Positions 7,000 to 54,000 of a stretch of 64,000 nt of DNA are shown in pieces. Each line of letters opens with the position of its first letter. The stretch's first letter is position 1. The position numbers and the translations under genes were made by a program. The stretch is from Octopus bimaculoides (lineage: Eukaryota), in the NCBI RefSeq assembly GCF_001194135.2, contig NC_068990.1:71617289-71681288 (forward strand), given 5' to 3'. The notes beneath the pieces were generated by a model that had not been told where the DNA came from, searched no databases, and worked only from the letters and a program-made list of their open reading frames with translations.

Positions 7000-9259
7000 T
7001 ATAACACAGCCTGTATGTAACAGGGAGACAACAGTGGATTAGAAAATATTTCACTCTGACTGTCTGACTGTTTGAAGTTTTCAAGTCATTTTACAAAACC
7101 AAGCCCCAACACATTTACCTATCTGTGCATGTATTTGTGCGCGCGCGCACACACATACATTTAATGCACTTACATAAGGAAATAGCAGAATCTTTTTAAA
7201 TAATTGGATACTTCAAAAGAAAAAGATGAAAACGAAACAAATTAATTGCTAACGATAAATTATTAGAATATCTGATTAGTTTTAAAAGTTAAAAAAAAAA
7301 AAAAAAAAAAAAAACCTTAAGCATTACTGTAAAACTGATTTAGGAAAAAAAATCTATTTTAATGTGTGTGACCTATTTGTTACTAAGCAACCAAATCTTG
7401 ACCTGCTAAGACACGCAGCAACAGTACGAGATGCGACGCTTTATTGTTGTCAGACTGCAAAAAAGTCTCAGTCCATGCTTTGTTCCGCCCACTATTATTT
7501 TCACTATTTATCTTTTGTGCCTGTCACGACCTATCTGTTTTTTTTTTGTTTTTTAACTATTAACTGATCTCGTAACCATGCCTGTATATAACTACTACTG
7601 TTAAAAGTTGGTGTCAAGGAGCCAACGTAGAAGCCTCTGCATGATCGCATGACCTGCTTAGCAATAGCAACCAAACCTACATACCCCTTCCCATTTAAGA
7701 AAGCCTTGGTTTATAGGTCCGCTCGATCAGGCCTGACTTTGGGTTAAAAATCAACAGCGTCTCTTCACGTAATTGGCTTAATGATAAAACACACACACAC
7801 ACATTGTCTGGATCTAACAGCGAGAATACGGAAAGACCCTGCCCGTCGTATAGTATAAATCAAACCCAGGTGAGGCTAATCCTCAGTCAGGTTTCTATTC
7901 CTTACAGGGTGGGTGGGGCCTCGCACCGAATCTAGAAATCGATCTTATATATTGACACAGCACAGCGTTGTAGAGCAAGACGAAAGTTCTACGTGACCCC
8001 GAGAAGCTCAGTTTCGATTCCTTAACAGGACTAATTTAGTTATCTCTACACGAATGCAGGCAACCAAATAAACCAATTCAACTAACGAAGGGGCGTTGCC
8101 GGGAAAGGTTTCATTACTCTAATTCCTTCCCTATCTGGGGGTGTTGTACAGGGAGTGTTCTCATTTGAAAATGGATTCTTATATTTGAAAGATTTTTGGA
8201 ATATATCTTAGCTACATCGAAGTGCTATTCAGTCCCACTACCCAAGACGGAAACTGAAAGAAGCCTTGTTCCCCTCTACAGCTCGATAACTGGTGTTGGT
8301 TTGTTTGCGTCCCTGTCACTATGCAGTTCGGCAAAAAAAAACAAAAAAACAAGAGGCCCATAGAATTAGTACCGGGTTTTTAAAAAAAATAAGTTCTGGG
8401 GTCCATTTTCGCTCGGCTAAACCCTTGAAGGCGGTACCCTAGCATGGCGACAATCTAATCACCAAAACAAGTTTAAAAAAAAGACACACTTATTGATATT
8501 GGAATTTATACATACATACAATATTGGTACCTGATTGATATAGTAAACCGAATTGGTTTNNNNNNNNNNNNNNNNNNNNNNNNNNNNNNNNNNNNNNNNN
8601 NNNNNNNNNNNNNNNNNNNNNNNNNNNNNNNNNNNNNNNNNNNNNNNNNNNNNNNNNNNNNNNNNNNNNNNNNNNNNNNNNNNNNNNNNNNNNNNNNNNN
8701 NNNNNNNNNNNNNNNNNNNNNNNNNNNNNNNNNNNNNNNNNNNNNNNNNNNNNNNNNNNNNNNNNNNNNNNNNNNNNNNNNNNNNNNNNNNNNNNNNNNN
8801 NNNNNNNNNNNNNNNNNNNNNNNNNNNNNNNNNNNNNNNNNNNNNNNNNNNNNNNNNNNNNNNNNNNNNNNNNNNNNNNNNNNNNNNNNNNNNNNNNNNN
8901 NNNNNNNNNNNNNNNNNNNNNNNNNNNNNNNNNNNNNNNNNNNNNNNNNNNNNNNNNNNNNNNNNNNNNNNNNNNNNNNNNNNNNNNNNNNNNNNNNNNN
9001 NNNNNNNNNNNNNNNNNNNNNNNNNNNNNNNNNNNNNNNNNNNNNNNNNNNNNNNNNNNNNNNNNNNNNNNNNNNNNNNNNNNNNNNNNNNNNNNNNNNN
9101 NNNNNNNNNNNNNNNNNNNNNNNNNTCTCTCTCTCTCTCTCTCTTTGAAGGATAATTAATAGAAAATCTAGAGATATCGGGAAATGCTTTCCTTAAATAT
9201 TAGACCTGTTAATTAGAGGTTGGAAAATTCTGTTTACTCAAAGAAAGATATTAAAAGGT

Positions 9260-11930: not shown

Positions 11931-12078
11931 ATGGCTGATTTCGAGAATTTCGAGTCTGCTGGTGATGGAAATGTCGAAGAAGACCCTGCTGCTGACTTTT
12001 TAGCTCGTGAACAGACAGAACTCGCAGGTCTTGAAGACGACAACTTTCCCGTTGCAGATGCCTCTCAGCCAACTGCAG
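11931..12078 (+). CDS. Clc: Clathrin light chain, coding exon 1 (MADFENFESAGDGNVEEDPAADFLAREQTELAGLEDDNFPVADASQPTA-G)
   Basis: ATG in context aacaaaATGG. Contains the conserved CLC N-terminal motif EEDPAADFLAREQ-x-x-LAGLEDD. Ends at donor CAG|gtacgt, phase 1. Confidence 0.97.
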
Positions 12079-12585
12079 GTACGTAGCTGTTATAGTTGTT
12101 TAAAACTGACCGAATTAAGATCTTCCAGTTACTCCCCTCAAAATGTACGCCCATTATTTTATGTTACATCTCTGAAATATATAAATATTCGATCAATTTA
12201 GTCATTCGTCTATATTATTGTCTTGACTGTTCAATCGTAAATGAATTAATATTCTCTAAATTCTTATTCAAAATGTTATCGAGAAAAAGAACACTAAAAT
12301 CTGAAACAACCTGTCGGATGGCGTGATGCAAGTTCAATGTATGAGTATATATATTTGTAGCGGATGATCGAAAATAGTCGTTGTCATTCATTGACTATCA
12401 TTGAATTGCTTGTAATATTGATCTGCCTGTTGAAAATTAGTGTGCTATTTCAGTAACATACTGAACTAAAAGCTTATTAGTAAAAAGTTATTCGCCTCTA
12501 AATAGATACCTCACTTCGTGCCTGAAACCCATCCCATACATTTCTTATATTCTGATAAGTAACACACAACACACACACGTAGATC

Positions 12586-12621
<36 letters not shown>

Positions 12622-13287
12622 NNNNNNNNNNNNNNNNNNNNNNNNNNNNNNNNNNNNNNNNNNNNNNNNNNNNNNNNNNNNNNNNNNNNNNNNNNNNNNN
12701 NNNNNNNNNNNNNNNNNNNNNNNNNNNNNNNNNNNNNNNNNNNNNNNNNNNNNNNNNNNNNNNNNNNNNNNNNNNNNNNNNNATTAGTTATAATTTTTTC
12801 CCCCGGAAATTCCCTCTTCAGAGAACGATGTATTTATTCCTGATTAACATAACTCTTTCCATCGATTTTTACCAACTTTGCTAATATGAGTTAGCTTTCT
12901 TTAATTTTACTTCCTCGTTCAATGATGTGTGCCGCCTCGTCACTTCCTGATGTGTGCTTGTGTATAAAGCTAATTTACAACTAGATAAAATACAAAAAAG
13001 AAAAAAGATCATGCGAGCACAATCATCTCCACCATTATCTTCAAGAGCAAGGAAGTCGAGTTAAAAAAAAGATGCGAGTTGTTAAAGCTGAAGCTGGTTC
13101 AAATGATACAAAATTACCCTTTCTCTTTTAAGTGTGGCACGTTCCTACAATTTTGGTAGGTAATTAATTAGATAACAATTTTTTTTTTCTCGTCGAATTT
13201 CTCCTTATCAGACTTCTGATGGGACCTGTACATTAGTCTCTAACTCCTTGAACTTTTTACTGACCACACACACATGTATATATATAG

Positions 13288-13338
13288 GTCTTGAAGATGA
13301 CAACCCCCCCGTTGAAGATGTTACTCTTCCAACCACAG
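13288..13338 (+). other. Candidate duplicated 51-nt exon (G-LEDDNPPVEDVTLPTT-G) inside a diverged copy of the exon 1/intron 1 junction
   Basis: 39/51 identical to 12028-12078 with no indels. Retains donor CAG|gtacgt and is preceded by TACTGAC and tatatag. Phase 1-1. The polypyrimidine tract is poor. Confidence 0.45.
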
Positions 13339-18634: not shown

Positions 18635-18705
18635 CTGATGGGTTTAACACCTTTGAAGAATCAAATGCAACAGTTAATGGTTTGAGTGATGCAGATGTGC
18701 CACAG
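18635..18705 (+). CDS. Clc: Clathrin light chain, coding exon 2 (ADGFNTFEESNATVNGLSDADVPQ)
   Basis: Acceptor ttctattgtag and donor CAG|gtatgc. 71 nt, converting phase 1 to phase 0 exactly as exons 1 and 3 require. Low-conservation acidic linker. Confidence 0.85.
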
Positions 18706-20198: not shown

Positions 20199-20319
20199 AC
20201 TAATGGACCTACAGATGGAAGTGGTTATGCTGCTATAGCTCAAGTTGATAAACACCATCGAGAACCTGAGAAAATCAAGTTGTGGAGAGAAGAACAAAAG
20301 AAACGGCTTGAACACAAGG
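20199..20319 (+). CDS. Clc: Clathrin light chain, coding exon 3 (TNGPTDGSGYAAIAQVDKHHREPEKIKLWREEQKKRLEHK)
   Basis: Acceptor cttgcttgcag and donor AAGG|gttagg. Matches the CLC NGPTD..YAAI.QVD...EPE.I..WREEQ..RLE motif. 121 nt, phase 0 to 1. Confidence 0.96.
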
Positions 20320-22977: not shown

Positions 22978-23089
22978 ATGCTGAAGAAGAAAATAAGAAG
23001 GAAATATGGCGTGAAGCTGCAAAGAAAGAGCTTGAAGATTGGTTGAAAAATCAGGCAGAACAGCTTATTAAGACCAAAGAAAACAACCG
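22978..23089 (+). CDS. Clc: Clathrin light chain, coding exon 4 (DAEEENKKEIWREAAKKELEDWLKNQAEQLIKTKENNR)
   Basis: Acceptor gattgtag and donor CCG|gtaata. Heavy-chain-binding helix with W..AKKELEDW...Q.EQL.K.K.NNR. 112 nt, phase 1 to 2. Confidence 0.97.
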
Positions 23090-25380
23090 GTAATACTACT
23101 GTTTTAGTTATAAATCTTCATCTATCAATAAATGTTTTTCTCTTTCACTTAAATCAGGTATACAGTTATTGAGATTTTAGTGTTCTTGTCTGATACAAAA
23201 AGAATACTCTCAACATTTTATTTACTAAGCACTTGCCTACCGTTGCATTGATTGATATACATATTATTGTAGTGTTTAACTTGTCTGCTTTAGTAAGAAT
23301 TAAATCTTTCAGAAAGATCTGTAGATCTTTGGAGGCCAAATAAGTAAAATTTATATTATAATCAAATTTGAATTTTGATTGGCATTTTGTTCCTTGCTTA
23401 TATTTTTGTGTAATTCCTTTAAAAAAGATTAAAATCTTAAATTAGTAAAACTATTATAATCTGAAACACTGGTATGGAATGACCTAGAAATGTAAGTAGT
23501 AACATTGGTGATTGAATGAAAATACAGTGAAGTTAAAAAAAAAAAAAGACCTGGAATCAAAATTCTCATTCCTGCTTGGACATATTTATTCTGATGTCCT
23601 CCTGACAACAGTCTGTTCCACTTGTAGAAGCTGTAATACCGTCAATATTCTTGAATGAAAACATAGAATGGCTTCTCTAAAATTTTAACTTGGATATGTA
23701 AAATAATTGTATCTAGTGTTGTGTATTAGAACAAGGGCCAAATGTAAGAGTAATTTAATGCATTGTTGAAGCTTCTTTTTATATAGAGCCTGTTGTTTGA
23801 TGATGGGCATTCTTAAAGATGTTAAATACTTCTCTTCCTTACAGCACACTAACATTTTACTATTTTATTGAACTCATGCCAGTACAAACTTTACTAGTCT
23901 CTCTAGCCAATGAGGAAATATCTTCAGGAACGTTTGATCTACTTGAAATTGCAGCCAAATCTCCCTCAAATCATAGTCTTTATCACTTATTTAGGAGGGA
24001 AGGGCAGTACACATGACCCCTTTATAGGACCTCTGAGACTATTGAAGGGGAAGGACAGTATCCAAGGACCAGTTGGCAGTGTTAAACCAGATGACGGATT
24101 AAGTCTGCCACCCCAAACAGTAAATTTTTAAAATTGTGGCAGATTTAGTGACATTCTTTAGACTTCAACTTTATAACAGGTTTAGACATTTGAATAATTA
24201 TCACCATGAAGGAAAAACTACAGAAATAAAATTCTTGTTTGCCAATGATATATATATCTATTAATTTTCTAAGTTGTATTTATTTCCACTCAACACTGAA
24301 AGTAATATTCATTGTGCATGAAATCTTTTGTGAACAAAGTCAGTAATTTATTGTTCTTTGAAATCTTGTATTATTGTTCTATGCTATGTTTGCTCTTGTC
24401 CCCTATATTTTATTGACATTGTTCCCATCTGTATGGCACTTCCCTACCACGTGTATGGCACTACTGTTCCAACTTTGCGCTAGTGTTATCTTTCAGTATA
24501 TAAATATGCACTTTTATCTTGTTGATGCTGTATAATTAATGCTTTCTTATTTAAGTGCTGTAATATTTGCTTCTTGGTAAGAAAAAGAAAAAAAGTCTTG
24601 TTAGTAATTAAGGACAATAGCCAATAACATATTTAGCATTTAAGGAGTTCAACTGGTAAGTTCTGCTGTGTTAACTCCTAATCTTTAATAGTTTAAATTT
24701 TTATCAACCCCAATCACGTCTGTTCATTCTGTTACTCAATTTGTTTGTTCTTGAAATTATATTCAAATATAGGATATATCTGGCAGTTGTGAAACTACTT
24801 CAACAGAAATTATACAGAATTATAATATACATATAGAATAGAATTAAAGAATTAAAATGTTTTGTTTTAAAAAAGCTTGTTGCACTATGTAAAAAGTTAC
24901 AATTTTGTTTGAAATTGTAATTTTAATAATTGAATTATTATTATAATAAAAACAAAATAATACTTTATTTGGCAGCTGTGCATTGTTAACCAGCTAGAGG
25001 AGATTCCTCTTGAGGTTAAAACATTGCAGTAAAGTCCATTTGAATGGAACAGCCATATTGAAGTGGCTATGAACATTAATTTTATATTATCTTTAGGTTT
25101 CACCTTTTTCCTTTTTAGATTTTTTTTTTTTTTTTTTTTAGAGATGACAGGTGATGCAATTTCATCCTGCTTTCAAGCCTCTTATTATCGTGACTTAAAT
25201 TGTCTCCCTCCATCATGAAACACTATGAACTTTGTGAACATTGTAGATCAGTAATTCCTCACCAAGCTATTTCCCCCTATGCTCCGGTAACATCTCTTTG
25301 AATATAAACATGTCAAACTGATTTCTTTATACGTCGTCTTTGGTGCACTTGTAAGTGTGTATCTCATTGTTCTTCCACAG

Positions 25381-25419
25381 AGCTGCTGCCGCAGCCGAGC
25401 TTGCAGACATCACTTGTGG
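25381..25419 (+). CDS. Clc: Putative alternative 39-nt cassette exon of clathrin light chain (R-AAAAAELADITC-G)
   Basis: Acceptor tctcattgttcttccacag and donor TGG|gtaaga. Symmetric phase 2-2 and open in frame. Local GC/CpG retention within a CpG-poor intron. Confidence 0.75.
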
Positions 25420-25596
25420 GTAAGACTAAAACTGTAGCGACGCACTCTAAGTAGACTTTAGACATTTGCTGTTGTTGTCATTGTTGTTGTCAGTTCGTCT
25501 GTAATCTTTATTTATCTTTAGTTCCACTGTAGAAATTTATTTTATTTTTAAAGGGATCATTTTATTTCTTTAGCATGACCATCATTCTGATTATAG

Positions 25597-25627
<31 letters not shown>

Positions 25628-26633
25628 TTTTAATCACATCTTATTAGAAACCTCTTAATTCCTCCTACAGTCTGTACAACCACCTCAAATACACTGACTG
25701 TAGTGTTATAGCATTTGTCTGTTATTTATTTGCCAGATATCTGATTTTTGTATGACTTACTATCAGCAGCCAACTTAGTCAGTCTCAAAGGTCTTTTATT
25801 CAGAAAATGTATTTTGTTATCCTGTAGCAATATTTTATCATCGTGTAACGTTTGTCTACCATGCTGGTATGAGTTTGATGGTGCCACAGGATCTAACAAG
25901 CCAGAGGATTGTGTGTTGAGCTCCCATGTCTATTTTAGCATGGTTTCTATAGCTGGATTCCCTTTCTAATACCAATCATCTTGAGTACTTTTATGTGGTA
26001 CCGGCACTACTGAGTTCAACTTGCAAGTCAAAGAAAAAGATCTCCCAAATGAGTGGAGGTGTAGTAGAGAGGGAGGTGGCTTTATGTCAAGTTTTGAGCT
26101 GCTTAAAGCATGACAGACAGTCACGGTTGTCTTGCTACAGAGGAGATACAAGGCTACTTTGCATCACATAATAGTGGGTGGGTGTAACTGGAAAGAGATA
26201 AAGATGGTGGTGCTAAGGTACCAGAGCATACTCTCAAGGTACAAAAAGGTGAGTATGAAAGAATATGGGAAGAGAGTAGGAAAGGGTGGATTGATAAGTT
26301 TGTAAGAGTGTGAGAAGAGAGTGACAGCTGGTTAGGGTTGAGTATTGTAAATGATGTGTGGAGAAATAGTCAATGGTAAATACCTGTTTGAATTCCTACA
26401 AGGATCCCTAGAGGTAGATAGTTGTAACATATTTGCTCTAAGTGACTGTGGAAGTGCCTTTATGACCAGCTGCTTCTCAAAAAATCTGTATTCTCCTCCC
26501 CAACTGAAACCAGCTTGTTAAAGATAGTAAAAATTAATGTTAATTTACTATGTTTTGGAAAATAGAATCAAGGTTGAGCATCCAGATAAAGTTAACCATA
26601 TGTAGAATAATGATAATAAAAGTTATATATGTA

Positions 26634-26683
<50 letters not shown>

Positions 26684-29600
26684 TATAGACTAATTTTAAC
26701 TATTGTTAATTATCATTATCTGTTATATAATATCACGCATTTGGGTTGTTTTTTAAAAAATTTTTGGAAATTACAGGATGCTTTCATTTGCTCGACCACT
26801 GTCTGATAATTATAAAAATAATTTATAGATATGGTAGATCTTGGGAAACACAGTCGTGAAAGTGACATTAAAGTAATTATCATTAATACCCTTGCAATAA
26901 ATGATTTGAACTGTTGGTAAATATTCACAAGTGTCAGGGGTGTTTAAAATTCATATAAATTTTTGAATATAAAGGTAATTTTAATATTCATGTTGTCTGG
27001 TTAACTAGGTTGCTTCCCAATTAGGTGGTCTTGGTTTCAGTCCCACTGCACTGCATCTTGGGCAAGTGTCTTCTACTAGAGTCTTGGGTTGACAAAAGGC
27101 TTGTGAGTGGATTTAATAGGTGGAAACAGAATGAAGCCTGTTGTGTGTGTGTGTCTGTGTTCACACCCCACTGCCACTTGACTGTCAGTGTTGGTTTGTT
27201 TACATCCCGGCAAAAGAGGTCAATAGAATAAGTTCCAGGCTTTAAAAAAATAAGTGCTGAGGCTGATTTGTTTAATGAAGCCTTTCAAGGTAGTGCCCCA
27301 GCATAGCCGTAGTCCAATGCCTGAAGACAGGCAAAAAATAAAAGCTTAAAAATTACCTATATTTGTTCCCTCCAAAAGTTTTAAAGATTAACTGCTTAAT
27401 CTTGTCATAGACATCTGAATTTTCTGGCTCGAAACTACTATAACAAAATAAATGGAAAATGGTAAAAGTTAGTTGTATTCCTTCAACTGTCAAATTTCAG
27501 AATAAGTTATTTGTCAGTTGAATAAAGAACAGCGTTGGAACATAGCATTATATTTTATATCTGGTTTTTATCTGAAAGGTTTCCTTTTAGTTTTTTGGTA
27601 ACATTTCATCTAGTTAAATTTTTGTCTTTAATAAAATTGCCTTTTGTTTGATAACAGGCACAGTTTTCCTCTGTGATGGAATGTGTTTGTTTGAACGATA
27701 TACTGTCCAAATGAAAAGTTCTTGACCCTGTACAGCATATTGTAGCAAAATTCAATGTGAGCAGAATTAAATTTAAATGCGTGAAACATTATTGAAATGA
27801 TATGAGAGTATATATAATGAATTCTATTTTAGGCGCAAGGCCAACCATTTTGAGGGGAGGGATGGGTCGAAACCTCTGACCTACCTCACTTTCCAGTATT
27901 TAATTAGTACCTTGTTTTATTGGTCCCAAAGAGATAAAAGGAAGAGTCTCATCATTATATATATATATATATATATATATATAATGAAAAGTTTTCTGTA
28001 ATTTGGTGCAGTTAAATGATTGATGGTGTTCATTCATTTTGTAAAACACTTGCAAATGATGGACTAAAGTAATAGACAGATAGGAGGAGGGAGTCATACT
28101 CTATGGTGGAAAGCTAGAAATGAGGTTTAGCTAACAAGTAAAATGCAGGAGTATTTACCAGCTGCAGGACTCTGTGATAATTGCTAATATATTGCATGCA
28201 GCGTGAGACATTTGAGCGATACTAGATATCCACTTAATGGAGATTGCCAGAAAATATTTCACAAGAGCAATATAATATCTCCATTGTCATCTTTTATCAA
28301 AGTAAAAATATTTTATAGGGAAGAACCTACAGGAGTCTGTTTTTGAAGATAATGAGTTTTTAGTGTTAAGCTAGTATTGGATATAATTGGATTGCATAGA
28401 ATTTAACCCATGTTGGATACAATTACTCGTAAAGTATCCTACATTTTGTAGGATTCTTGTATGGGTGGAAGAGGAATATTTAGATTAGATATGAGGATAT
28501 GATTTTACTGATCTCCATCATTAGGTCCCAGTAATTTTATTGATCTTGAAAGAATGAAACATTAAGTAGATTCCAGTGGTATTTGAACTCGGTGTAAAGA
28601 GATGTAACCAAATACCATAAATGATCAACTCCACTGAATCTGCCATCCTCTTCATGATTGGTTGTGAACTCAGTGGAAACTTCTGGTTACAGACCAATGC
28701 CTGTTAAAATTCTGTTCTTAGCTGTTTGATTGATTGACAGATGACCTTTGATGTGGTTGAACAACCAATCCCAACCAGTTGAGATTCACGGTATAAGTTG
28801 TACTAATCATCCTTTTGATCACTGAATGCAAAATGTAACTCACATGACCTCCATTCAGATTTCCCTGTGTCACTAATTCACCCTTGTATGCAATCCATCC
28901 TGCTGAGAGGACTGGAGCAATGTGAAATGAAGTGGTTTGCTCAAAAACACAATGCACAGTCAATATGGGAATTGAAATATTGACCTTACATTCATGAATG
29001 CAACATTCTAACCACTAGGCCATGCACCTCAGCTATTGCTTCTAAACTAATGTCCATTGTATAAGATTTATGTTCTTTTCAGAAGTTGAAGAATAAGTTT
29101 GAGATGTGGAAGTGTTCCATCTGAAGGTGATCATTGCCATAACAAAAATTTGACTTATACATGTAAAGGGCTATACTGATAAGGGGTTGTTCTGCAATTG
29201 CTGGGTAAGAAAAATGTTTTAGGTAACTGTAATGATGTTTTCATAGACAGACAGTTTTGTGTGGTGAAGTGTTTAGTAGAAAATATGAAGTATTTGTTCT
29301 TACTGATGAGATGGTGCAAATGCTTTATTGCAGATTCGTGTTTGTGCTAGCCTAATGATAATAATATAACATCAGTTTATATTAGTAGACTTAAGTTGAA
29401 TAATGTTTTGCTATATCTTTATTTCTTGACTTGACTTCCAATTTTTAAATTCTTTTTAATGAGAAATTCAAAAACTGCTGTTCCTTTTTCCTCCTCCTCC
29501 TCCTCCTCCTCCTCCCCCCCTTTTTTTTTTAACTAGACTTCCTGCTAACATTTCATTTTTTTTTTCTTCTTGATCAGAAAATTTCTTCATAGATGGTCTT

Positions 29601-29781
29601 ATAAAGTACTTTGATGTTTACTCTTAGCAATTATCATTGAAGGTAGTACTTTTATATATCTGTTTATATAGAATTTAATGCCTTAACATATCCAAGGCTG
29701 CAACAGGTGTGCAATTACCACAGGTACTTTATTCTTACTCACAATTTTCCCTATCCCTTTCTTTACCCGTTTCCTCTACAG

Positions 29782-29808
29782 GCATGCAGAGGCTTTGGAG
29801 AAAAAAAA
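29782..29808 (+). CDS. Clc: Putative alternative 27-nt microexon of clathrin light chain (HAEALEKK-K)
   Basis: Branch-like tactcac, a ~35-nt polypyrimidine tract ending ttcctctacag, and consensus donor AAA|gtaagt. Symmetric phase 2-2 and open in frame. Confidence 0.72.
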
Positions 29809-31548
29809 GTAAGTATTCAGTGTAGGTAATTTTGCAGTTTTATCATGCAGTATATACATATGCTGCAACTCTTTAGGGATAAATTTTTTTCTCATCTCTA
29901 TATTCTAATAAATTAATAATAAAAAAAAAATATTTTGAATTAGCCATAAAATTCTGTAATTTAAACATTTACTGCCACTATGGATTAGCTTTCTTTTCTG
30001 GATTGATTATTTTCTGTAGATGCTTTTAGTGTAAATACTGTTTAATATAGCTTTGCTTTTTAAGTCTCAGGAAAACAGTTATCCCAACTGTATGGGTTAT
30101 AAGTATCTCTTGATTTTGGTCATAAAATTTCCTATAAAGCCTAATACTGGACTTAATTGTTGTGATGGTTGTTGTTCAATTTAGCTTTTTCCCTTTGCTT
30201 TTCTTTAATAAAAAAAAATCAGTTTCCAACATTTGCATNNNNNNNNNNNNNNNNNNNNNNNNNNNNNNNNNNNNNNNNNNNNNNNNNNNNNNNNNNNNNN
30301 NNNNNNNNNNNNNNNNNNNNNNNNNNNNNNNNNNNNNNNNNNNNNNNNNNTTAATGTTTGGGTTTTTTTCAACAATTATTTTCATTGAATTATTTTAAAT
30401 TTTAAAAGATTTTCATTTATCAAAATGTTTGACTTTACATTTGTACCAGTTTTAAAGTAATTATTAAATGTGTAAATCTTATGACAATATATAATCAAAA
30501 TGTAATTCTTTCTCTCTGGGTTGATTCCAAATGACAGAGCAGAAAGGCATCTCCAAAGTGAGACTATATCACTGTCTACTATGAACATATATACACCATG
30601 CTTGAGTGAATGTTGAATATTTAATACACATGACTACCTTTAGTAGAAATTTTGTTGTAGTGGGACACACCTACATATTTCAGATAAACTTATTAACCTA
30701 CACTAAGTCAACATTGATATCTTACATGAAACATCATCATTTACTGTTTGTTGATAGTTGTCACTGCCTATCCATATGAAATATCACAAACCTCTGCTGG
30801 CTTCTGTCCTCAGTTGCTGTCGTTATTGCTATCAAATCTTCTCGTATTATGTATCTTGGTCAAGGTTTACCCTGATTTCTTCCACTTATACAGTATTTGT
30901 CTTGGCAACTGAGTTACCTCCATTCTTTGGACCTACCTAAAATTATAGAGGTCTCATTGCACCAATATCTCTCTTCCTTATAAGGAATTTGGTTTTCTTT
31001 AGGATGAGCCTTTTCATGTGATGTTCATATTTTTGTGTTGGGCGTCTCATCATGAATGCATGCTGTTTATTTTATCTTTGTAGTATATTGTCCATGCCTA
31101 TGATCTGTAGAATAAGGTGGATAATACTACTGCTATGTGTACTTCACATTTAACTTGGACTGATACATACTTGTAGTTCTTCTCTCTTTCTCAGTCCCCT
31201 GAATTCTGAGCTAACTTTGTTCAACCCGCAATCTAGTTTGACATTGAGTCTATCAGCATTTCTCATAATACTACCGAGAGAGGTAAAATATCTTGCCTCC
31301 ACCAGCTCTGACCTTTTAATAATGTTGGAATCTGGTTGTGCTTCTTGGTTAAAGTTGGAATTTAATTAATAAAAAACTTCAATATTCTGGATGTTAATTT
31401 TCAAGCTGACCTCTGTGGTTGCACCGTCAAAAACCCCCATATTCTGCTTATTCTTTCACACTATGGACGACAAAACATGATCATCAAACATTTTTCTTAC
31501 TAATATGTGTGTTACTGATATGTAGAGCTTTGAGATCTAACACCTTAA

Positions 31549-31689
31549 CCATTTAGCATCTAAACTGACTGTGTTCAGCCTTTACCTGGTTTATGTTCAA
31601 ACCAGTCAGATCCAGCCCCTCACACATATCCTACAATGTCTTTCTAAAAATAAACAATCACATCGTTGAAATATCTGAATGCTAAAGGG
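31549..31689. mobile_element. piggyBac-like MITE (family 1)
   Basis: TTAA flanks with ends ccatttagcat and atgctaaaggg. A related copy lies at about 43395-43610. Confidence 0.7.
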
Positions 31690-34051
31690 TTAAACTGGTT
31701 ATCATCAGGTCTTGTCTCTGGAATACCTCCTCGAGCATTGTTGACAAGCAAGATGAGAATAATGTTGATACTAGCATGCTGCCCTGCTTGTCTCCCAGTT
31801 CATCTGTGTAATTTGGGTTGTCTTCTTGGCAAGTAGGGATTTTACAGATGAGTGAAACTTCTAGCATCCAAACCTGAGTATTTGCTACAGGCTCAACTGG
31901 TTTACACTTGAACTCCTTTGTGAAGTTAAGATCACATAGTGTGTTCTGTTCCACACATTTCTTAATCTAAGGCTGAACATCATAAACATAGTGCTACTTC
32001 TCCCTTCTGAACTCGCATTGAGTTTTAAGTAGAACATTAGTGCCTTTTCTCATACAGTCTACTGCTCAATACTTTTGTGTGTGTAAAATCATTTAATGTT
32101 TGTTTTCCATGCTGGAGTGTGTGTGTGTGTGTGTGTTGCTCTTGTCTTGACATATTAAACAAATGTCACCATTATACATACAGAACTATTTGTTTGTAAT
32201 CCTTTGTGGAAGCATGTTAGGCCATTGATCTGTTCATTGTTTGAAGGAAAATGGGGAAGGTTGGTGACTGAAAGAGTATCTGGCCATACAAAATTTTGCC
32301 TCAATAACTTTTGTCTGGCCTATGCAAATATGGGAAAGTGCATGTTGAAACTATGTAAATATCAAAATATCTCTCAACATGGTTGAGTAATGTAAATCCT
32401 GCTATTGTGGAAAAAATTAATGTAAAGATGAAACAAAAACATGTATAAAATGATCCATAATGTTTAATGATGAGATAAATGTTAAGGCTTAATATTTATC
32501 ATAAATGATTTAAAGAATATTCTATCAAGTAATTAGTTTATGGTACAATGTCTATCAGTGTTCTTGTTCTTCACTGCTCTTTTTCTGTCTCAAATTTATC
32601 CTTATGAATATCTAATATAATAGACATTCATAAGATTAAATTGAAAATTCATTATAATATCTAATACTGTATTTTAGTAGTCGGAAATTCATTGATATTA
32701 AAACACTATGAAGAAAAAAACCTTTATTAAATATTTATAAAAGTAAATTTCCCTCAATATAAAATATTCCTATTGTCTGGTAGTTGTAGCTTCCTCTCTG
32801 CTATATTGAAATGTACTAATTATTATTAACCCAGTTATTTTGTTAACCTAATTATTAATGACTTCTACTTGAGTATTTCTTCATATTTGTCAATTTGCCA
32901 AATATTTTCACTAAAATTGTTCCTAGTGCTAAGAAAGAAAAATGTTTCGCTTTTATTGTGGCTGCTTTATTATTTTATTACTGTTTTTTTTTTTTCATGT
33001 TTATTATTTTTATTATTCATTACCTTCTCAAATAAAGTTTCGCTTGTTTTCACTGAAATCTTGCTAGATTTTACATTATTCTTTGTTGGTAAGGTACCTC
33101 AACTCTTTAATAAGTATATTAAACTGAGGTAGCAATCTGGTTTCAATTCCTGATGGAAAACATTTTTTTTATTACTACGAATAGCCTTCAGAAAGGCATG
33201 AACGTCACAATCTTTTTTCTCTTTCTTTAAATGGTGGTCTTGTACCTCCATACTATATAAATATGCTTGTGAAAATTTTGGAAATACTTTAATTACTGAA
33301 CTGTCAGATGTATATTGATTAGTGTAAATGTAACTTATATCATGAATATGCTATCATTTGAGTGATAACTAATTTCTGATAAATTTGATTCGTACGATTT
33401 AATTAATTTAAGCAATATTGTCTCTCTAATTACATATGAAGTAATACTAGTTTATGCTAATAATTGTAAGTATTTTAACAAAGTTAGCTTGAATAAGTCC
33501 TATTTCTCTTAGGTCCTTGGTATTCCATTTAATTTTCTTTTAACTTTCATTTTAAAATTATACTCATGTTTTCCATTAATTTATAAAAGTCTAATTAGTG
33601 AAGCAATGTATAAAATTGTACTGTTTGTATAATTATTTGCCAAAAAATGTAGACAGATTTATACTACTGTCTATTTCTGAAATAACATTTCGAATTGCTA
33701 ACATTTAAATTGAAGAAATAAACCTCATTTTGAAATTAGAGCTCCATAGTTATCTTAAGTGACTTCACTACTAGCTGTTACATGTTCAGGTGTGGTCATA
33801 TCTCAGTGTACCAGCAATTAATGAATTTATTAACTGATACAAAAACTTACATCGTCATATATGAACAAAATTTTAGATTTTTAATTACTGAGATATTATT
33901 AATACACACTTGCACTGGTTCAATGGATAGCACATTATCAAAGGAATGTGGAATATTTTTGTCTTTACCAGCAGTAAATATTGTACATATTTCTATTGTT
34001 TACCCTGCTTTGTATTATTGTATTGATTAAATCTTGCTTTCCCTTATGTAG

Positions 34052-34223
34052 GGCACAAGAAGAAGCAAGCATGAAGGACCGTGAAGAGAGCATTGCTGGT
34101 CAAGAATGGGAGAAAATCTGTCGGCTTTGTGACTTCAACCCTAAGCATTCCAAAAACACAAAAGACGTGTCTCGTATGAGATCAATATTGCTACAGTTGA
34201 AGCAAACGCCTCTGGTTCGCTGA
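34052..34223 (+). CDS. Clc: Clathrin light chain, terminal coding exon (AQEEASMKDREESIAGQEWEKICRLCDFNPKHSKNTKDVSRMRSILLQLKQTPLVR*)
   Basis: Acceptor ctttcccttatgtag, phase 2. Conserved CLC C-terminus EWE.I..LCDFNPK.SK..KDVSRMRS.L..LKQ.PL.R. TGA at 34221-34223. Confidence 0.98.
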
Positions 34224-34401
34224 AGATTGTAGCCTCATGAAATAGTTGTATGCTAATGAGAATGTTAAAGAAGAATCAGGATTTGTGAAACTATTGTTTT
34301 GGTTGTCATGGTTGAAATTTAAACTAGAAGCAATTACTAATTCCTTAAGAGTAATTGATCAAAAATCAATAGATTATGTTAACTGAATTTGTAGACTTGT
34401 C

Positions 34402-51021: not shown

Positions 51022-54000
51022 CTGCAATACAATCAGTGTTTCACTAATTAACATTTAAGAAATAATTTAGTATTTCTTTCTTACACTTGTACATAACAAA
51101 TATACCAATATGATGAGAAAAAAAGAAAAAAAAATGAAATTCATATATTATTTTTCCCTGCTGGTATGAAAACAATTAAGATTTAATGTATTCAATTATT
51201 AAGGCTGAAAATTTTTCAGATAAACTCATTGAGATGATATCTCTTATGAAATACACTTCAGCTATGTGTTTCAAGTAATTTTGAAAATAATTGAGAATTT
51301 GTAAAGATTTAGTAAAACTGTCTTTTCTTTATTATTGAGCTGATGTTTGTAAAATTACCTTAACAAAAGCAATTTCAATAAAATTACAATGGAAACATTT
51401 TTATTTAAATGTGAACAATTTAAAACAAAACCTTTTGTTTCATTGACTCAAGGGTGATCTCAAAATGGTTAAATGAAAATATAAAGAGAATACAACACTC
51501 CAGAAATCTCTATAGAAATTTTACTTTATTTAAAGCTGGCAGTAATTTTAAAGAAAGAGCCCGAATCAGCTTTTATTATTTATACTGATTTGTTAATCAG
51601 CAGTTTTTGCATTTAGTTCATTGCTCATTTATCTTTTATTTAAAGACCATTGATTGAAATGTTTAAGAAAATTTTATAAAATGTGAGAAAACAANNNNNN
51701 NNNNNNNNNNNNNNNNNNNNNNNNNNNNNNNNNNNNNNNNNNNNNNNNNNNNNNNNNNNNNNNNNNNNNNNNNNNNNNNNNNNNNNNNNNNNNNNNNNNN
51801 NNNNNNNNNNNNNNNNNNNNNNNNNNNNNNNNNNNNNNNNNNNNNNNNNNNNNNNNNNNNNNNNNNNNNNNNNNNNNNNNNNNNNNNNNNNGTGTATACT
51901 CTTTTACTCTTTTACTTAGTTTCAGTCATTCGACTCTGGCCATGCTGGGGCACCATTTTGAAGGGCGTAGAGGAACAAACCAAGCCCAGTTCTTATTTTT
52001 GAAGTCTGGTACATTTTCTATTAGTCTGTTTTGTGGACCTGCTAAGTTATGGGGGTGTAAACAAACCAATACTGGCTGTCAAGCAGCGGAGGAGGGGGGG
52101 ACATGAAGACACACACACATACACACGTGTGTGCAACAGGCTTCTGCATATTTTTCATCAACAAAAGTTCCTCATAAGGCATTAGTTGGCCTGGGGCTAT
52201 ATTAGAAGACACTTCTCCCAAGGTATCACATAGTAGGACTGAACACAAAACCATGTGATAGCCATGTTCACAACATATATACACACACATACATACATAA
52301 ACAAAATAGTTCATACATATGTACAAGATTTATCCTCCATCACACACGTCCACAAGCGCACAGGTACATACCTATATAGACAGACCCATGCACATGCACA
52401 CACATATACACACACAGAATCAGATTTAAATAATTATAATAATGCTTTATATTCATCAAGTGTCACAAATATTAAAGAATATTTAGAGTTACTTTCCCAA
52501 ACGGATGTATAATCACAGAAGTTAACTAATGTTTCTGCACAAGAAAGACACACGACTGACTGCCTCAGTCTATGAGGCTAGAACCAGGATCCACTTCTTA
52601 ACAGTAAAAGAGGTTTGCAGTAGAAGGAACATCCAAAAGTAACAAACAACTAGCACTCCATTGGTTATGATGATGAGAGTTCCAATTGATCTGATCAACA
52701 GAGCAGTCTGCTTGTAAAATTAATGAGCAAGTGGCTGAGCACTCCACAGACACGTGTACCCTTAATGTAGTTCTTAATGAGAGAGAGAGAGAGAGAGCTA
52801 ACATAGAGTCACTCCATTTACTAAAAACAGCAGCTAAATTTATTTCATATCATAAATGGATCTCCAACAGTTTTGATGATGAGCACTCAGTTATTTGAGC
52901 ACCTGAACTTCCTGCTCAGTGAATTACCTTTTAGGTAGCTTAGTATTCTCCAAAAGTGTGTACCATTAATGTAATTTTCAAACAGAACCAGCATGAGACA
53001 AGGCTGGACTTTTGAATCACTGGTACAATCTACCTGACAGGCTTCTGCACAGCTTTCATTTATGCACACAGCTTACAGGTCAAGGTGAGGAACCTATGGT
53101 AAATGACACAAGCAAAAATGCCATGCAGTGACATCAGACTAATGACTTCATGATTGAGAAGTGAACTTTTTAACTAGCCATGCCAGGTCCATACTTTATC
53201 ATCTTACAAAACAATATGTTGGATAGTGTAGTCCTAGATATTCTATATCTGAAAAGACAGGTTGGTCATAATTGGCATACCTTTTATCATAGGAGTGATC
53301 TTGCAGCTGAACAAAACAACAGGAGTGTAGAAATATATTGGACAGTGAAGAAAACATAACATGTCAACCACAGAAGACTGCAGTTCAGTGAATGTCAGAA
53401 TGTACATCAACTAAGAGCTGACATAATATATTTGGATCTATGGATTGAAGATCATCCTATTGTATTTTCCAGTATCTAACTCAAAGTGTATAGTGTAAAC
53501 ATGTAGTATAAACATTCAAACATCTTTGCAAATCCAGCTGCATTTTACATGGAACTTTTGGTCCTCCAAAGTCATCTTGGTGTGTAAGCCAACCTATCTT
53601 TTTTTTTTTTTTTTTTTTTTTTTGTAAATTTTGGTCTGAACAATTCGAGTTGTATGCAACATAATATGATAGTTATTTGATTGGATATCTATGTGGCATA
53701 GATCTCCTTGATCAGAGGTTACACAACTAGTAACATCAACAAAAGAATATCTATGCAGTCCTCAGCCTAAAAGAAATAATCAGAATAACCAATCTTAAGA
53801 AAAGAATATTTGTCAGTATAGTCTTGGCTACCACACTATCTGAGGAGAGGACTGGATGGTCAGGGCTGAAACATCTTTGATCAAAGATCAGCTCAATCAG
53901 AGCTGAATTGGTGCTAAATAACAACACAAAAACATCAGTAACATCAACAAAGATAACTTTACTACAACACCTATGACAACAATAATAACAATGAGGCATG

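What the first reader, a model, noticed from the sequence alone, without database searches (positions are those of the whole stretch)
23090..34051. Combinatorial microexon cassette in an invertebrate clathrin light chain, at the site of the vertebrate neuronal inserts
Seen: the 11-kb phase-2 intron after ...KTKENN-R holds at least two symmetric, stop-free small exons with good splice sites (39 and 27 nt), plus a weaker 21-nt candidate. The two good ones alone give four in-frame isoforms, e.g. NNR-AAAAAELADITCG-HAEALEKKK-AQEE. Established: vertebrate CLTA carries neuron-specific 18- and 12-residue inserts, and CLTB an 18-residue insert, right after the equivalent NNR, between the heavy-chain-binding helix and the C-terminal segment. 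Inference: the peptides here show no evident similarity to the vertebrate inserts. A cephalopod may therefore have convergently evolved, or retained from an ancestor, neural tuning of clathrin at the same position.
Basis: partly seen in the sequence, partly recalled or inferred. Interest (0 to 1): 0.88.

Follow-up and report, generated by a model that had tools for sequence, protein, structure and literature searches.

The report
Octopus clathrin light-chain alternative exons
Two small optional exons (39 and 27 bases) in the octopus clathrin light-chain gene are real, conserved across octopuses and cuttlefish, and sit in exactly the intron where vertebrates insert their brain-specific exons, but they are already in public gene models and their brain specificity is untested.

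Summary
The window carries the Octopus bimaculoides clathrin light chain gene. The intron 23090-34051 splits the Arg codon of ...KENNR (phase 2). It contains two symmetric, stop-free cassette exons: A (25381-25419, AAAAAELADITCG) and B (29782-29808, HAEALEKKK).

All four combinations already exist as RefSeq/ENA isoforms in three Octopus species. An independent assembled transcript uses the A junctions exactly.

A and B are the only conserved islands in the intron. Exon A has intact splice sites and is 12/13 residues identical in a cuttlefish, a split of about 240 My. Exon B keeps position, length and phase but evolves fast.

The assembly gap hides about 66 AT-rich intronic bases. The 21-nt candidate has no support.

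Xenopus CLTA is split at the same codon and phase, so the site is truly equivalent. The peptides show no significant similarity to the vertebrate inserts. Other molluscs, a nemertean, a leech-like annelid and flies carry unrelated short inserts at this site. This favours repeated independent exon birth in an ancestral intron.

Neural specificity could not be tested. This is a new member of a known kind, of moderate interest.

The parts
22978..23089 (+).
   Evidence: Identical to O. bimaculoides RefSeq proteins P0002/P0004.
23090..34051 (+). Phase-2 intron (10,962 nt) at the same codon and phase as the vertebrate CLTA intron that holds the neuronal exons.
   Evidence: Xenopus CLTA comparison. 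Oyster, Physella and Haliotis also split the Arg codon in phase 2.
25381..25419 (+). Cassette exon A, 39 nt, phase 2-2, encodes AAAAAELADITCG.
   Evidence: Present in RefSeq O. bimaculoides X1/X4, O. sinensis X1/X2/X4, O. vulgaris models and Logan transcript L001. 100% amino-acid identity in O. sinensis and Argonauta, 12/13 in cuttlefish, with AG/GT intact. 4 of the 5 substitutions seen are synonymous.
25302..25619 (+). Conserved island around exon A. It aligns to Argonauta over 25302-25619 and to cuttlefish over 25362-25528 (E = 2e-24), in introns that are otherwise unalignable.
   Evidence: Whole-intron blastn. Alignment A1.
25466..25491 (+). UGUUGU-rich element about 45-70 nt downstream of the exon A donor, present in all four coleoids. 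Candidate intronic splicing enhancer; function inferred.
29782..29808 (+). Cassette exon B, 27 nt, phase 2-2, encodes HAEALEKKK.
   Evidence: Present in RefSeq O. bimaculoides X2, O. sinensis X1/X3/X4 and O. vulgaris models. Argonauta has HAEASDEKK at the orthologous place (shuffle p = 0.0004). Cuttlefish has a transcribed 27-nt exon HSSEMGSDQ in the same order, phase and length.
29749..29833 (+). Conserved island around exon B (octopus versus Argonauta, 78% identity).
   Evidence: Alignment A2.
29809..29930 (+). Read-through region after exon B. AA|G TAA gives ...EKKK-stop if the B donor is not used. AATAAA lies at 29907-29912, followed by an A10 run at 29921-29930. This corresponds to O. sinensis isoform X6, truncated and lacking the C-terminal domain.
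   Evidence: (P0009). It may be an internal-priming artefact.
30239..30350 (.). Assembly gap inside the intron. It corresponds to 66 AT-rich bases in O. sinensis (L003 21806-21871), which contain no plausible exon.
34052..34224 (+). Last coding exon (G-AQEEASMKDREES...KQTPLVR-stop), the conserved C-terminal domain.

Best explanation
Shown: exons A and B are genuine, independently skippable cassette exons of the single octopus clathrin light chain (CLC) gene. Both are symmetric (phase 2-2). Any combination therefore inserts 0, 9, 13 or 22 residues right after ...KENNR, between the heavy-chain-binding helix and the C-terminal domain.

Shown: exon A arose before the octopus/cuttlefish split, about 240 My ago, and is under strong purifying selection at protein and splice-site level. 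Exon B is equally old by position but evolves fast.

Shown: the host intron is ancestral, with the same codon and phase as in frog, oyster and snails. The exons themselves are coleoid-specific, so the resemblance to vertebrate CLTA/CLTB is parallel exon birth at a permissive site.

Inferred mechanism: the inserts lengthen the helical spacer that precedes the C-terminal, vertex-proximal domain. By analogy with the vertebrate splice inserts, this would change how the light chain influences triskelion knee conformation, lattice curvature and budding. That would give tissue-specific clathrin, most plausibly at synapses.
For: - Sequence, frames and splice sites.
- Splice-score ranks 1 and 3 of 342 candidates, versus 0.185 expected at 12 bits or more.
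- RefSeq/ENA isoforms with A, B, A+B and skip in O. bimaculoides, O. sinensis and O. vulgaris.
- Independent assembled transcript (SRR16213286) with exact e4-A-last junctions.
- Cuttlefish transcript with the B-equivalent exon.
- A and B are the only conserved intronic islands.
- Exon A is 12/13 identical in cuttlefish, with 3 synonymous and 1 D-to-E change.
- Split age of about 240-245 Ma: PMC13076209.
- Same intron codon and phase in Xenopus CLTA. Same in oyster, Physella and Haliotis.
- No exon-A-like sequence in those introns.
- AlphaFold2 model of the A+B isoform gives one continuous helix (residues 114-200) through NNR, A and B, with pLDDT 85-94.
- Vertebrate inserts lie near the trimerisation domain and alter knee conformation, cage size and budding: PMC7519287.
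Against: - No tissue-resolved expression could be obtained, so neural enrichment is unproven. The vertebrate 12-residue exon is also used in heart and skeletal muscle (PMC8712872).
- No conserved Rbfox GCAUG motif and no UGC cluster at the 3' splice sites, so there is no cis-motif signature of a known neuronal programme.
- Exon A has no transcript evidence in decapodiforms in the databases searched.
- Orthology of octopus B and cuttlefish B' rests on order, length, phase and splice-site context, not on peptide similarity (p = 0.2).
- The single-chain AF2 helix prediction is weak evidence about the assembled coat.
Confidence: 0.8

Rival explanations
1. The exons are real and regulated, but inclusion is not neural. 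It could be muscle-specific, developmental or broadly mixed, so the parallel with vertebrate neuronal clathrin is only positional.
For: No neuronal splicing motifs are conserved. Vertebrate CLTA exon 6 is included in heart and skeletal muscle. The UGUUGU-rich element downstream of exon A resembles GU-rich motifs bound by CELF-type factors, which are not neuron-restricted (my own knowledge).
Against: Nothing direct. Synaptic-vesicle recycling is the best-documented setting where CLC splice variants matter. Small conserved in-frame exons are predominantly neural across bilaterians (bioRxiv 10.64898/2026.09.05.749416).
Confidence: 0.3
2. The cassette is inherited from a bilaterian ancestor. Under this view, octopus exon A and/or B are orthologues of the vertebrate 18- and 12-residue exons and have diverged beyond recognition.
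For: The intron, codon and phase are identical. The architecture is two exons, as in CLTA. One insert in each lineage carries a Cys. There is a weak A-D-I/V match (LADITCG versus DADIIGY). Inserts at this site occur in many phyla.
Against: No significant peptide similarity (p = 0.06-1.0). Exon A is 92-100% conserved within coleoids, yet undetectable in oyster, Physella, Haliotis and Xenopus introns. Bivalves and a heterobranch snail share a different microexon (AAACATAAT...), and Haliotis has none in its 1.2-kb intron. Insert lengths and sequences differ in every lineage.
Confidence: 0.07
3. Exon B mainly serves as an alternative terminal or 'poison' exon. Failure to use its donor gives ...EKKK-stop and a light chain without the C-terminal domain (O. 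sinensis isoform X6).
For: An in-frame TAA immediately follows the B donor. AATAAA lies 99 nt downstream. The AAG|TAAGT context is kept in Argonauta.
Against: A genomic A10-A14 run follows the AATAAA, which is typical of oligo-dT internal priming. In cuttlefish the donor is gtgagt, which gives no immediate stop. B-containing full-length isoforms are annotated in three species and transcribed in cuttlefish.
Confidence: 0.1
4. The exons are splicing noise or annotation artefacts with no function.
For: RefSeq 'X' isoforms are computational models.
Against: They are conserved islands in otherwise unalignable introns over about 240 My. Substitutions in exon A are mostly synonymous, and frame and length are preserved. 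Independent transcript assemblies also contain them.
Confidence: 0.02

Closest known systems
Vertebrate CLTA exons 5 and 6 (18 and 12 residues) and CLTB exon 5 (18 residues): the neuronal clathrin light-chain inserts
   Same: The host intron is the same, splitting the Arg codon of NNR in phase 2. The cassette exons are small and symmetric. As in CLTA, two exons give four isoforms. The insertion point lies between the heavy-chain-binding helix and the C-terminal domain. One insert contains a cysteine.
   Different: No significant sequence similarity. Sizes are 13 and 9 residues rather than 18 and 12. The octopus has a single CLC gene rather than a CLTA/CLTB pair. Neuron specificity and the biophysical effect are unknown in octopus. 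Origin appears to be independent and coleoid-specific.
Mollusc 'KHN' microexon at the same site: oyster KHNM, scallop RGNM, mussel RDNM (12 nt), Physella KHNDVTESQG (30 nt). RefSeq models only.
   Same: Same phase-2 intron in the same phylum. It is an in-frame optional insert after NNR/TNR.
   Different: The sequence is unrelated, and no AAACAYAAY-type exon is found in any of the four cephalopod introns. It is much shorter. It has several UGC motifs just upstream of the acceptor, which octopus A and B lack.
Bilaterian neural microexon programmes (Srrm-eMIC-dependent, typically 27 nt or less, UGC near the 3' splice site; definition from my own knowledge) and recurrently evolved neural exons (bioRxiv 10.64898/2026.09.05.749416)
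   Same: The exons are short, in-frame and deeply conserved, with conserved flanking intron, in an endocytic gene. There are independent gains in the same gene in different lineages.
   Different: Exon A (39 nt) exceeds the strict size class. There is no UGC cluster. Neural inclusion is untested. CLC is not mentioned in the main text of that preprint, and its supplements are not held.

Membership tests
Clathrin light chain (Pfam PF01086) | Whole-protein match to the Clathrin_lg_ch family, including the N-terminal EEDPAA consensus, the central heavy-chain-binding helix and the C-terminal CDFNPK...LKQTPL segment | tested here: met
   The window exons are identical to O. bimaculoides proteins carrying PF01086. 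phmmer against PDB CLCb chains gives E = 4e-51. tblastn with human CLTA finds the exons.
Alternatively spliced cassette exon | Canonical AG/GT boundaries and frame preservation when the exon is included or skipped | tested here: met
Alternatively spliced cassette exon | Transcripts or gene models both with and without the exon | tested here: met
   A, B, A+B and skip isoforms. Logan transcript L001 is A-only. Cuttlefish transcripts exist with B' (L010) and without it (L011-L015).
Alternatively spliced cassette exon | Conservation of the exon and its flanks above intronic background | tested here: met
   A and B are the only conserved islands in the intron. Alignments A1 and A2.
Orthologue of the vertebrate CLC neuronal insert exons | Same intron position and phase | tested here: met
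   Xenopus CLTA ...AAT CG|gt versus octopus ...AAC CG|gt. The vertebrate exons of 54 and 36 nt are also phase 2-2.
Orthologue of the vertebrate CLC neuronal insert exons | Sequence homology of the inserted peptides or exons | tested here: not met
   Best ungapped BLOSUM62 scores are not above shuffles (p = 0.06-1.0). No A-like sequence in the Xenopus intron.
Orthologue of the vertebrate CLC neuronal insert exons | Neuron-specific inclusion | not testable with these tools
   No read-level RNA-seq access. Run accessions of the supporting transcripts have no metadata in the paper library.
eMIC/Srrm-type neural microexon | Length of 27 nt or less (strict definition, my own knowledge) | tested here: inconclusive
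   B is 27 nt and meets it. A is 39 nt and does not.
eMIC/Srrm-type neural microexon | UGC motif(s) close upstream of the 3' splice site | tested here: not met
   For A, the nearest TGC is at -37 in Octopus. For B, it is at -72 in Octopus and at -5 only in Argonauta and cuttlefish.

The most novel reading that the evidence does not exclude
The phase-2 intron after NNR may be a bilaterian-wide hotspot. Many lineages would have independently recruited short in-frame cassette exons there: vertebrates, coleoid cephalopods, bivalves and heterobranch snails, a periwinkle, a nemertean, a leech-like annelid, and gall midges and other arthropod-like taxa.

On this reading, changing the length of the helical spacer before the C-terminal domain is a repeatedly selected way to build specialised, probably synaptic, clathrin. 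Coleoid exon A, at least about 240 My old, would be the cephalopod counterpart of the vertebrate neuronal insert.
Probability: 0.35. Interest if true: 0.65.

Novelty: new member of a known kind. Interest (0 to 1): 0.45.

Why it matters
The two CLC papers I read (PMC8712872, PMC7519287) describe light-chain splicing only in vertebrates, and PMC8712872 notes only that invertebrates have a single light-chain gene. No cephalopod paper among the top hits of my library search mentions clathrin light chain.

Cephalopods evolved large brains independently. They carry a conserved two-exon cassette at the same codon as the vertebrate neuronal inserts, and many other invertebrates carry unrelated inserts at that site. 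Together these give a natural comparative series for asking what the insert position does to clathrin mechanics.

The series would also test whether synaptic specialisation of clathrin evolved convergently. The practical caveat is that the exons are already in RefSeq, so the new content is the comparative interpretation, not the sequence.

Tried and rejected
- Tissue origin of supporting transcripts. I searched the paper library for SRR16213286 and for the SRR82816xx series. No relevant metadata turned up.
- Supplements of the 2026 preprint on recurrent neural exons, which includes O. bimaculoides. They are not held.
- Wakeham et al. 2005 on CLC evolution. The paper is not held.
- Conserved neuronal splicing motifs (Rbfox GCAUG, UGC near the acceptor). 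None found.
- Homology of A or B to the vertebrate inserts, the nemertean insert, the Physella insert, or the start of their own last exon (exon-duplication idea). None significant. Vertebrate exon 5 versus the start of its own last exon reached only p = 0.03.
- An exon-A-like or KHN-like sequence across introns of other taxa. None found.
- A third conserved exon, such as the 21-nt candidate. No further conserved island exists. A 9-nt candidate at 25142-25150 scores well (13 bits) but lies outside the block conserved with Argonauta and appears in no isoform.
- Look-ups of O. vulgaris and cuttlefish genes by shorter isoforms failed. The longest isoforms worked.
- Rejected idea: that the HMMER alignment of A+B against the CLCb insert shows homology. 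That alignment is forced by the conserved flanks.
Full report
**What is in the window**

The + strand carries a clathrin light chain (CLC) gene. tblastn with human CLTA finds four blocks. Reading the sequence gives these exons:
- exon 1: ATG at 11932, ending at 12078
- an optional 51-nt exon: 13288-13338
- an exon near 18635-18705
- an exon at 20200-20319
- the last coding exon: 34052-34224

The encoded protein is identical to Octopus bimaculoides RefSeq clathrin light chain isoforms, which carry Pfam PF01086.

**Checking the observation**

Exon 4 ends ...AAC AAC CG|gtaata, so the intron 23090-34051 interrupts the Arg codon after its second base.
- Candidate A (25381-25419, 39 nt) is bounded by cacag| and |gtaaga.
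- Candidate B (29782-29808, 27 nt) is bounded by ctacag| and |gtaagt.
- Both are symmetric, and all four combinations read through to the normal stop.

I enumerated all 342 AG...GT segments of 9-60 nt in the intron that keep the frame open, and scored them with a simple splice-site score of my own. B ranks first (15.7 bits) and A third (12.0). Three candidates reach 12 bits or more, against 0.185 expected in 200 dinucleotide-preserving shuffles.

All 21-nt candidates score 5.3 bits or less.

**The assembly gap**

The gap 30239-30350 lies between B and the last exon. The O. sinensis orthologue has no gap. Its sequence is collinear with the window on both sides at 90-94% identity, and only 66 AT-rich bases fill the gap. 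Continuity and frame of the exons are therefore not affected.

**The exons are expressed and already annotated**

The first protein search and the cluster listing show these RefSeq isoforms.

| Species | Isoform | Cassette content |
|---|---|---|
| O. bimaculoides | X1 (XP_014774089), X4 | A |
| O. bimaculoides | X2 (XP_014774092) | B |
| O. bimaculoides | X3 (XP_014774093) | skip |
| O. sinensis | X1 (XP_036361865), X4 | A+B |
| O. sinensis | X2 | A |
| O. sinensis | X3 | B |
| O. sinensis | X5 | skip |

- The O. vulgaris ENA models also carry A, B or neither.
- An independent Logan assembly of run SRR16213286, from another Octopus species, is a 962-nt transcript. In it, exon 4, A and the last exon are exactly contiguous.

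All four predicted isoforms therefore already exist in public gene models. None of the top-ranked cephalopod papers in my library search mentions clathrin light chain. The two CLC papers I read describe splicing only in vertebrates.

**Conservation**

I fetched the orthologous genes of O. sinensis (L003), Argonauta hians (L002) and the cuttlefish Acanthosepion pharaonis (L004).

Exon A:
- It encodes the identical peptide in O. sinensis and Argonauta.
- In cuttlefish it encodes AAAAAELAEITCG, with AG and GT intact. There it sits in a 30-kb intron and is not annotated.
- Four of the five nucleotide substitutions seen are synonymous. The fifth is D to E.

Exon B:
- It is identical in O. sinensis.
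- It is HAEASDEKK in Argonauta (p = 0.0004 against shuffles).
- In cuttlefish it corresponds by order, length (27 nt), phase and splice-site context to a transcribed exon encoding HSSEMGSDQ.

Whole-intron blastn is the clearest result:
- Against cuttlefish, the only strong hit is the exon A region (25362-25528, E = 2e-24).
- Against Argonauta, the only strong hits are the A region (25302-25619) and the B region (29749-29833).

The octopodiform-decapodiform split is placed at about 240-245 Ma (PMC13076209). A UGUUGU-rich element 40-70 nt downstream of exon A is kept in all four species.

**Is it the vertebrate site?**

In Xenopus laevis CLTA (L005), exon 4 ends ...AAC AAT CG|gtaaaa. The 54-nt and 36-nt neuronal exons are phase 2-2, and the last exon begins G GCT GCT. 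The intron is therefore at the same codon and phase as in octopus. Oyster, Physella and Haliotis also split this Arg codon in phase 2.

**Ancestral or convergent?**

The octopus peptides show no significant similarity to the vertebrate inserts, to other invertebrate inserts, or to the start of their own downstream exon.

Other animals carry unrelated inserts at this junction:
- Lineus: VNQAEFFKERE
- scallops: RGNM; mussel: RDNM; oyster: KHNM
- Physella: KHNDVTESQG
- Littorina: YSSSSLT
- a leech-like annelid: SGIRG
- gall midges: ESAK
- arthropod-like transcripts: MTNK and EANK
- teleost CLTB: an extra LCPSLAR

The oyster 12-nt exon and the Physella 30-nt exon share their first nine bases, and the oyster donor aligns with Physella exonic GTAACT. 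These two are therefore homologous to each other.

No such exon exists in the cephalopod introns. No A-like sequence exists in the oyster, Physella, Haliotis or Xenopus introns. The best reading is an ancestral intron that has repeatedly acquired lineage-specific cassette exons. This matches the general pattern of recurrent exon gains in the same genes reported in a 2026 preprint that includes O. bimaculoides.

**How it probably works (inferred)**

In vertebrates the inserts lie near the trimerisation domain. They alter heavy-chain knee conformation, cage size, lattice quality and budding, and both neuronal light chains are needed for normal synaptic vesicle replenishment (PMC7519287).

An AlphaFold2 model of the O. 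sinensis A+B isoform, built with a 30-sequence alignment, predicts a single helix from residue 114 to 200. It runs through NNR, A and B with pLDDT 85-94. If that holds, A, B and A+B would add roughly 20, 14 and 33 Å of helix (my arithmetic at 1.5 Å per residue). Each would also rotate the C-terminal domain differently relative to the heavy-chain-binding helix.

This is a hypothesis. A single-chain model says little about the assembled coat.

**What could not be shown**

Tissue specificity could not be shown. The run accessions behind the supporting transcripts have no metadata in the paper library. The supplements of the relevant preprint are not held. No conserved Rbfox or UGC motif points to a known neuronal regulator. 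The neural part of the interpretation therefore remains an analogy.

**Verdict**

- As sequence annotation it is already known.
- As biology it is a new, well-conserved member of a known kind, and part of a broader, apparently undescribed pattern of inserts at this CLC junction across bilaterians.

Noticed in passing
window 13288-13338 (compare 12026-12118): There is a second alternative cassette near the N-terminus. This 51-nt exon (GLEDDNPPVEDVTLPTT) is a duplicate of the 3' end of exon 1 plus its donor (83% identity over 93 nt). O. sinensis has two tandem copies (around L003 3544 and 3877). O. vulgaris models use 0, 1 or 2 copies. The window has an assembly gap (12622-12782) about 500 nt upstream.
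   Followed up: partly
window 29809-29930; O. sinensis isoform X6 (XP_036361867, P0009): If the exon B donor is not used, the frame reads AAG TAA. The product then ends ...HAEALEKKK and lacks the whole C-terminal domain. AATAAA lies at 29907-29912, followed by a genomic A10 run. This could be a real alternative 3' end or an oligo-dT internal-priming artefact.
   Followed up: partly
L004 51684-51722 (Acanthosepion pharaonis): The cuttlefish gene contains an intact but unannotated orthologue of exon A (AAAAAELAEITCG, AG/GT preserved). It lies 16 kb into a 30-kb intron.
   Followed up: yes
L007 3076-3087 (Crassostrea angulata); L008 4895-4924 (Physella acuta): A 12-nt microexon (A AAA CAT AAT AT, read as KHNM) sits at the same CLC junction in the oyster. 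It is homologous to the start of a 30-nt exon in Physella, where the ancestral donor appears weakened (GTAAGT to GTAACT) and a downstream donor is used. Several TGC motifs lie within 35 nt upstream of the acceptor in both species.
   Followed up: partly
proteins P0063, P0073, P0103, P0113, P0118 (teleost and gar CLTB): Fish CLTB models carry an extra 7-9 residue insert (LCPSLAR / SRLSPSVAR) between NNR and the classical 18-residue neuronal exon. This would be a third small exon in the same intron.
   Followed up: no
window 25142-25150: A 9-nt in-frame candidate has strong splice scores (13 bits, rank 2 of 342). It lies 230 nt upstream of exon A, outside the block conserved with Argonauta, and appears in no isoform. 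It is probably chance.
   Followed up: partly
window 25466-25491 and orthologous places in L002, L003, L004: A UGUUGU-rich stretch downstream of exon A is conserved across octopods and cuttlefish. It is a candidate binding site for a GU-rich-element splicing factor.
   Followed up: partly
window 8560-9125, 12622-12782, 39790-39847, 41204-41841, 44655-45612, 49494-50236, 51695-51891: Seven further assembly gaps lie in the window (3,433 N in total, including the one in the finding). None touches a CLC coding exon that I mapped.
   Followed up: no
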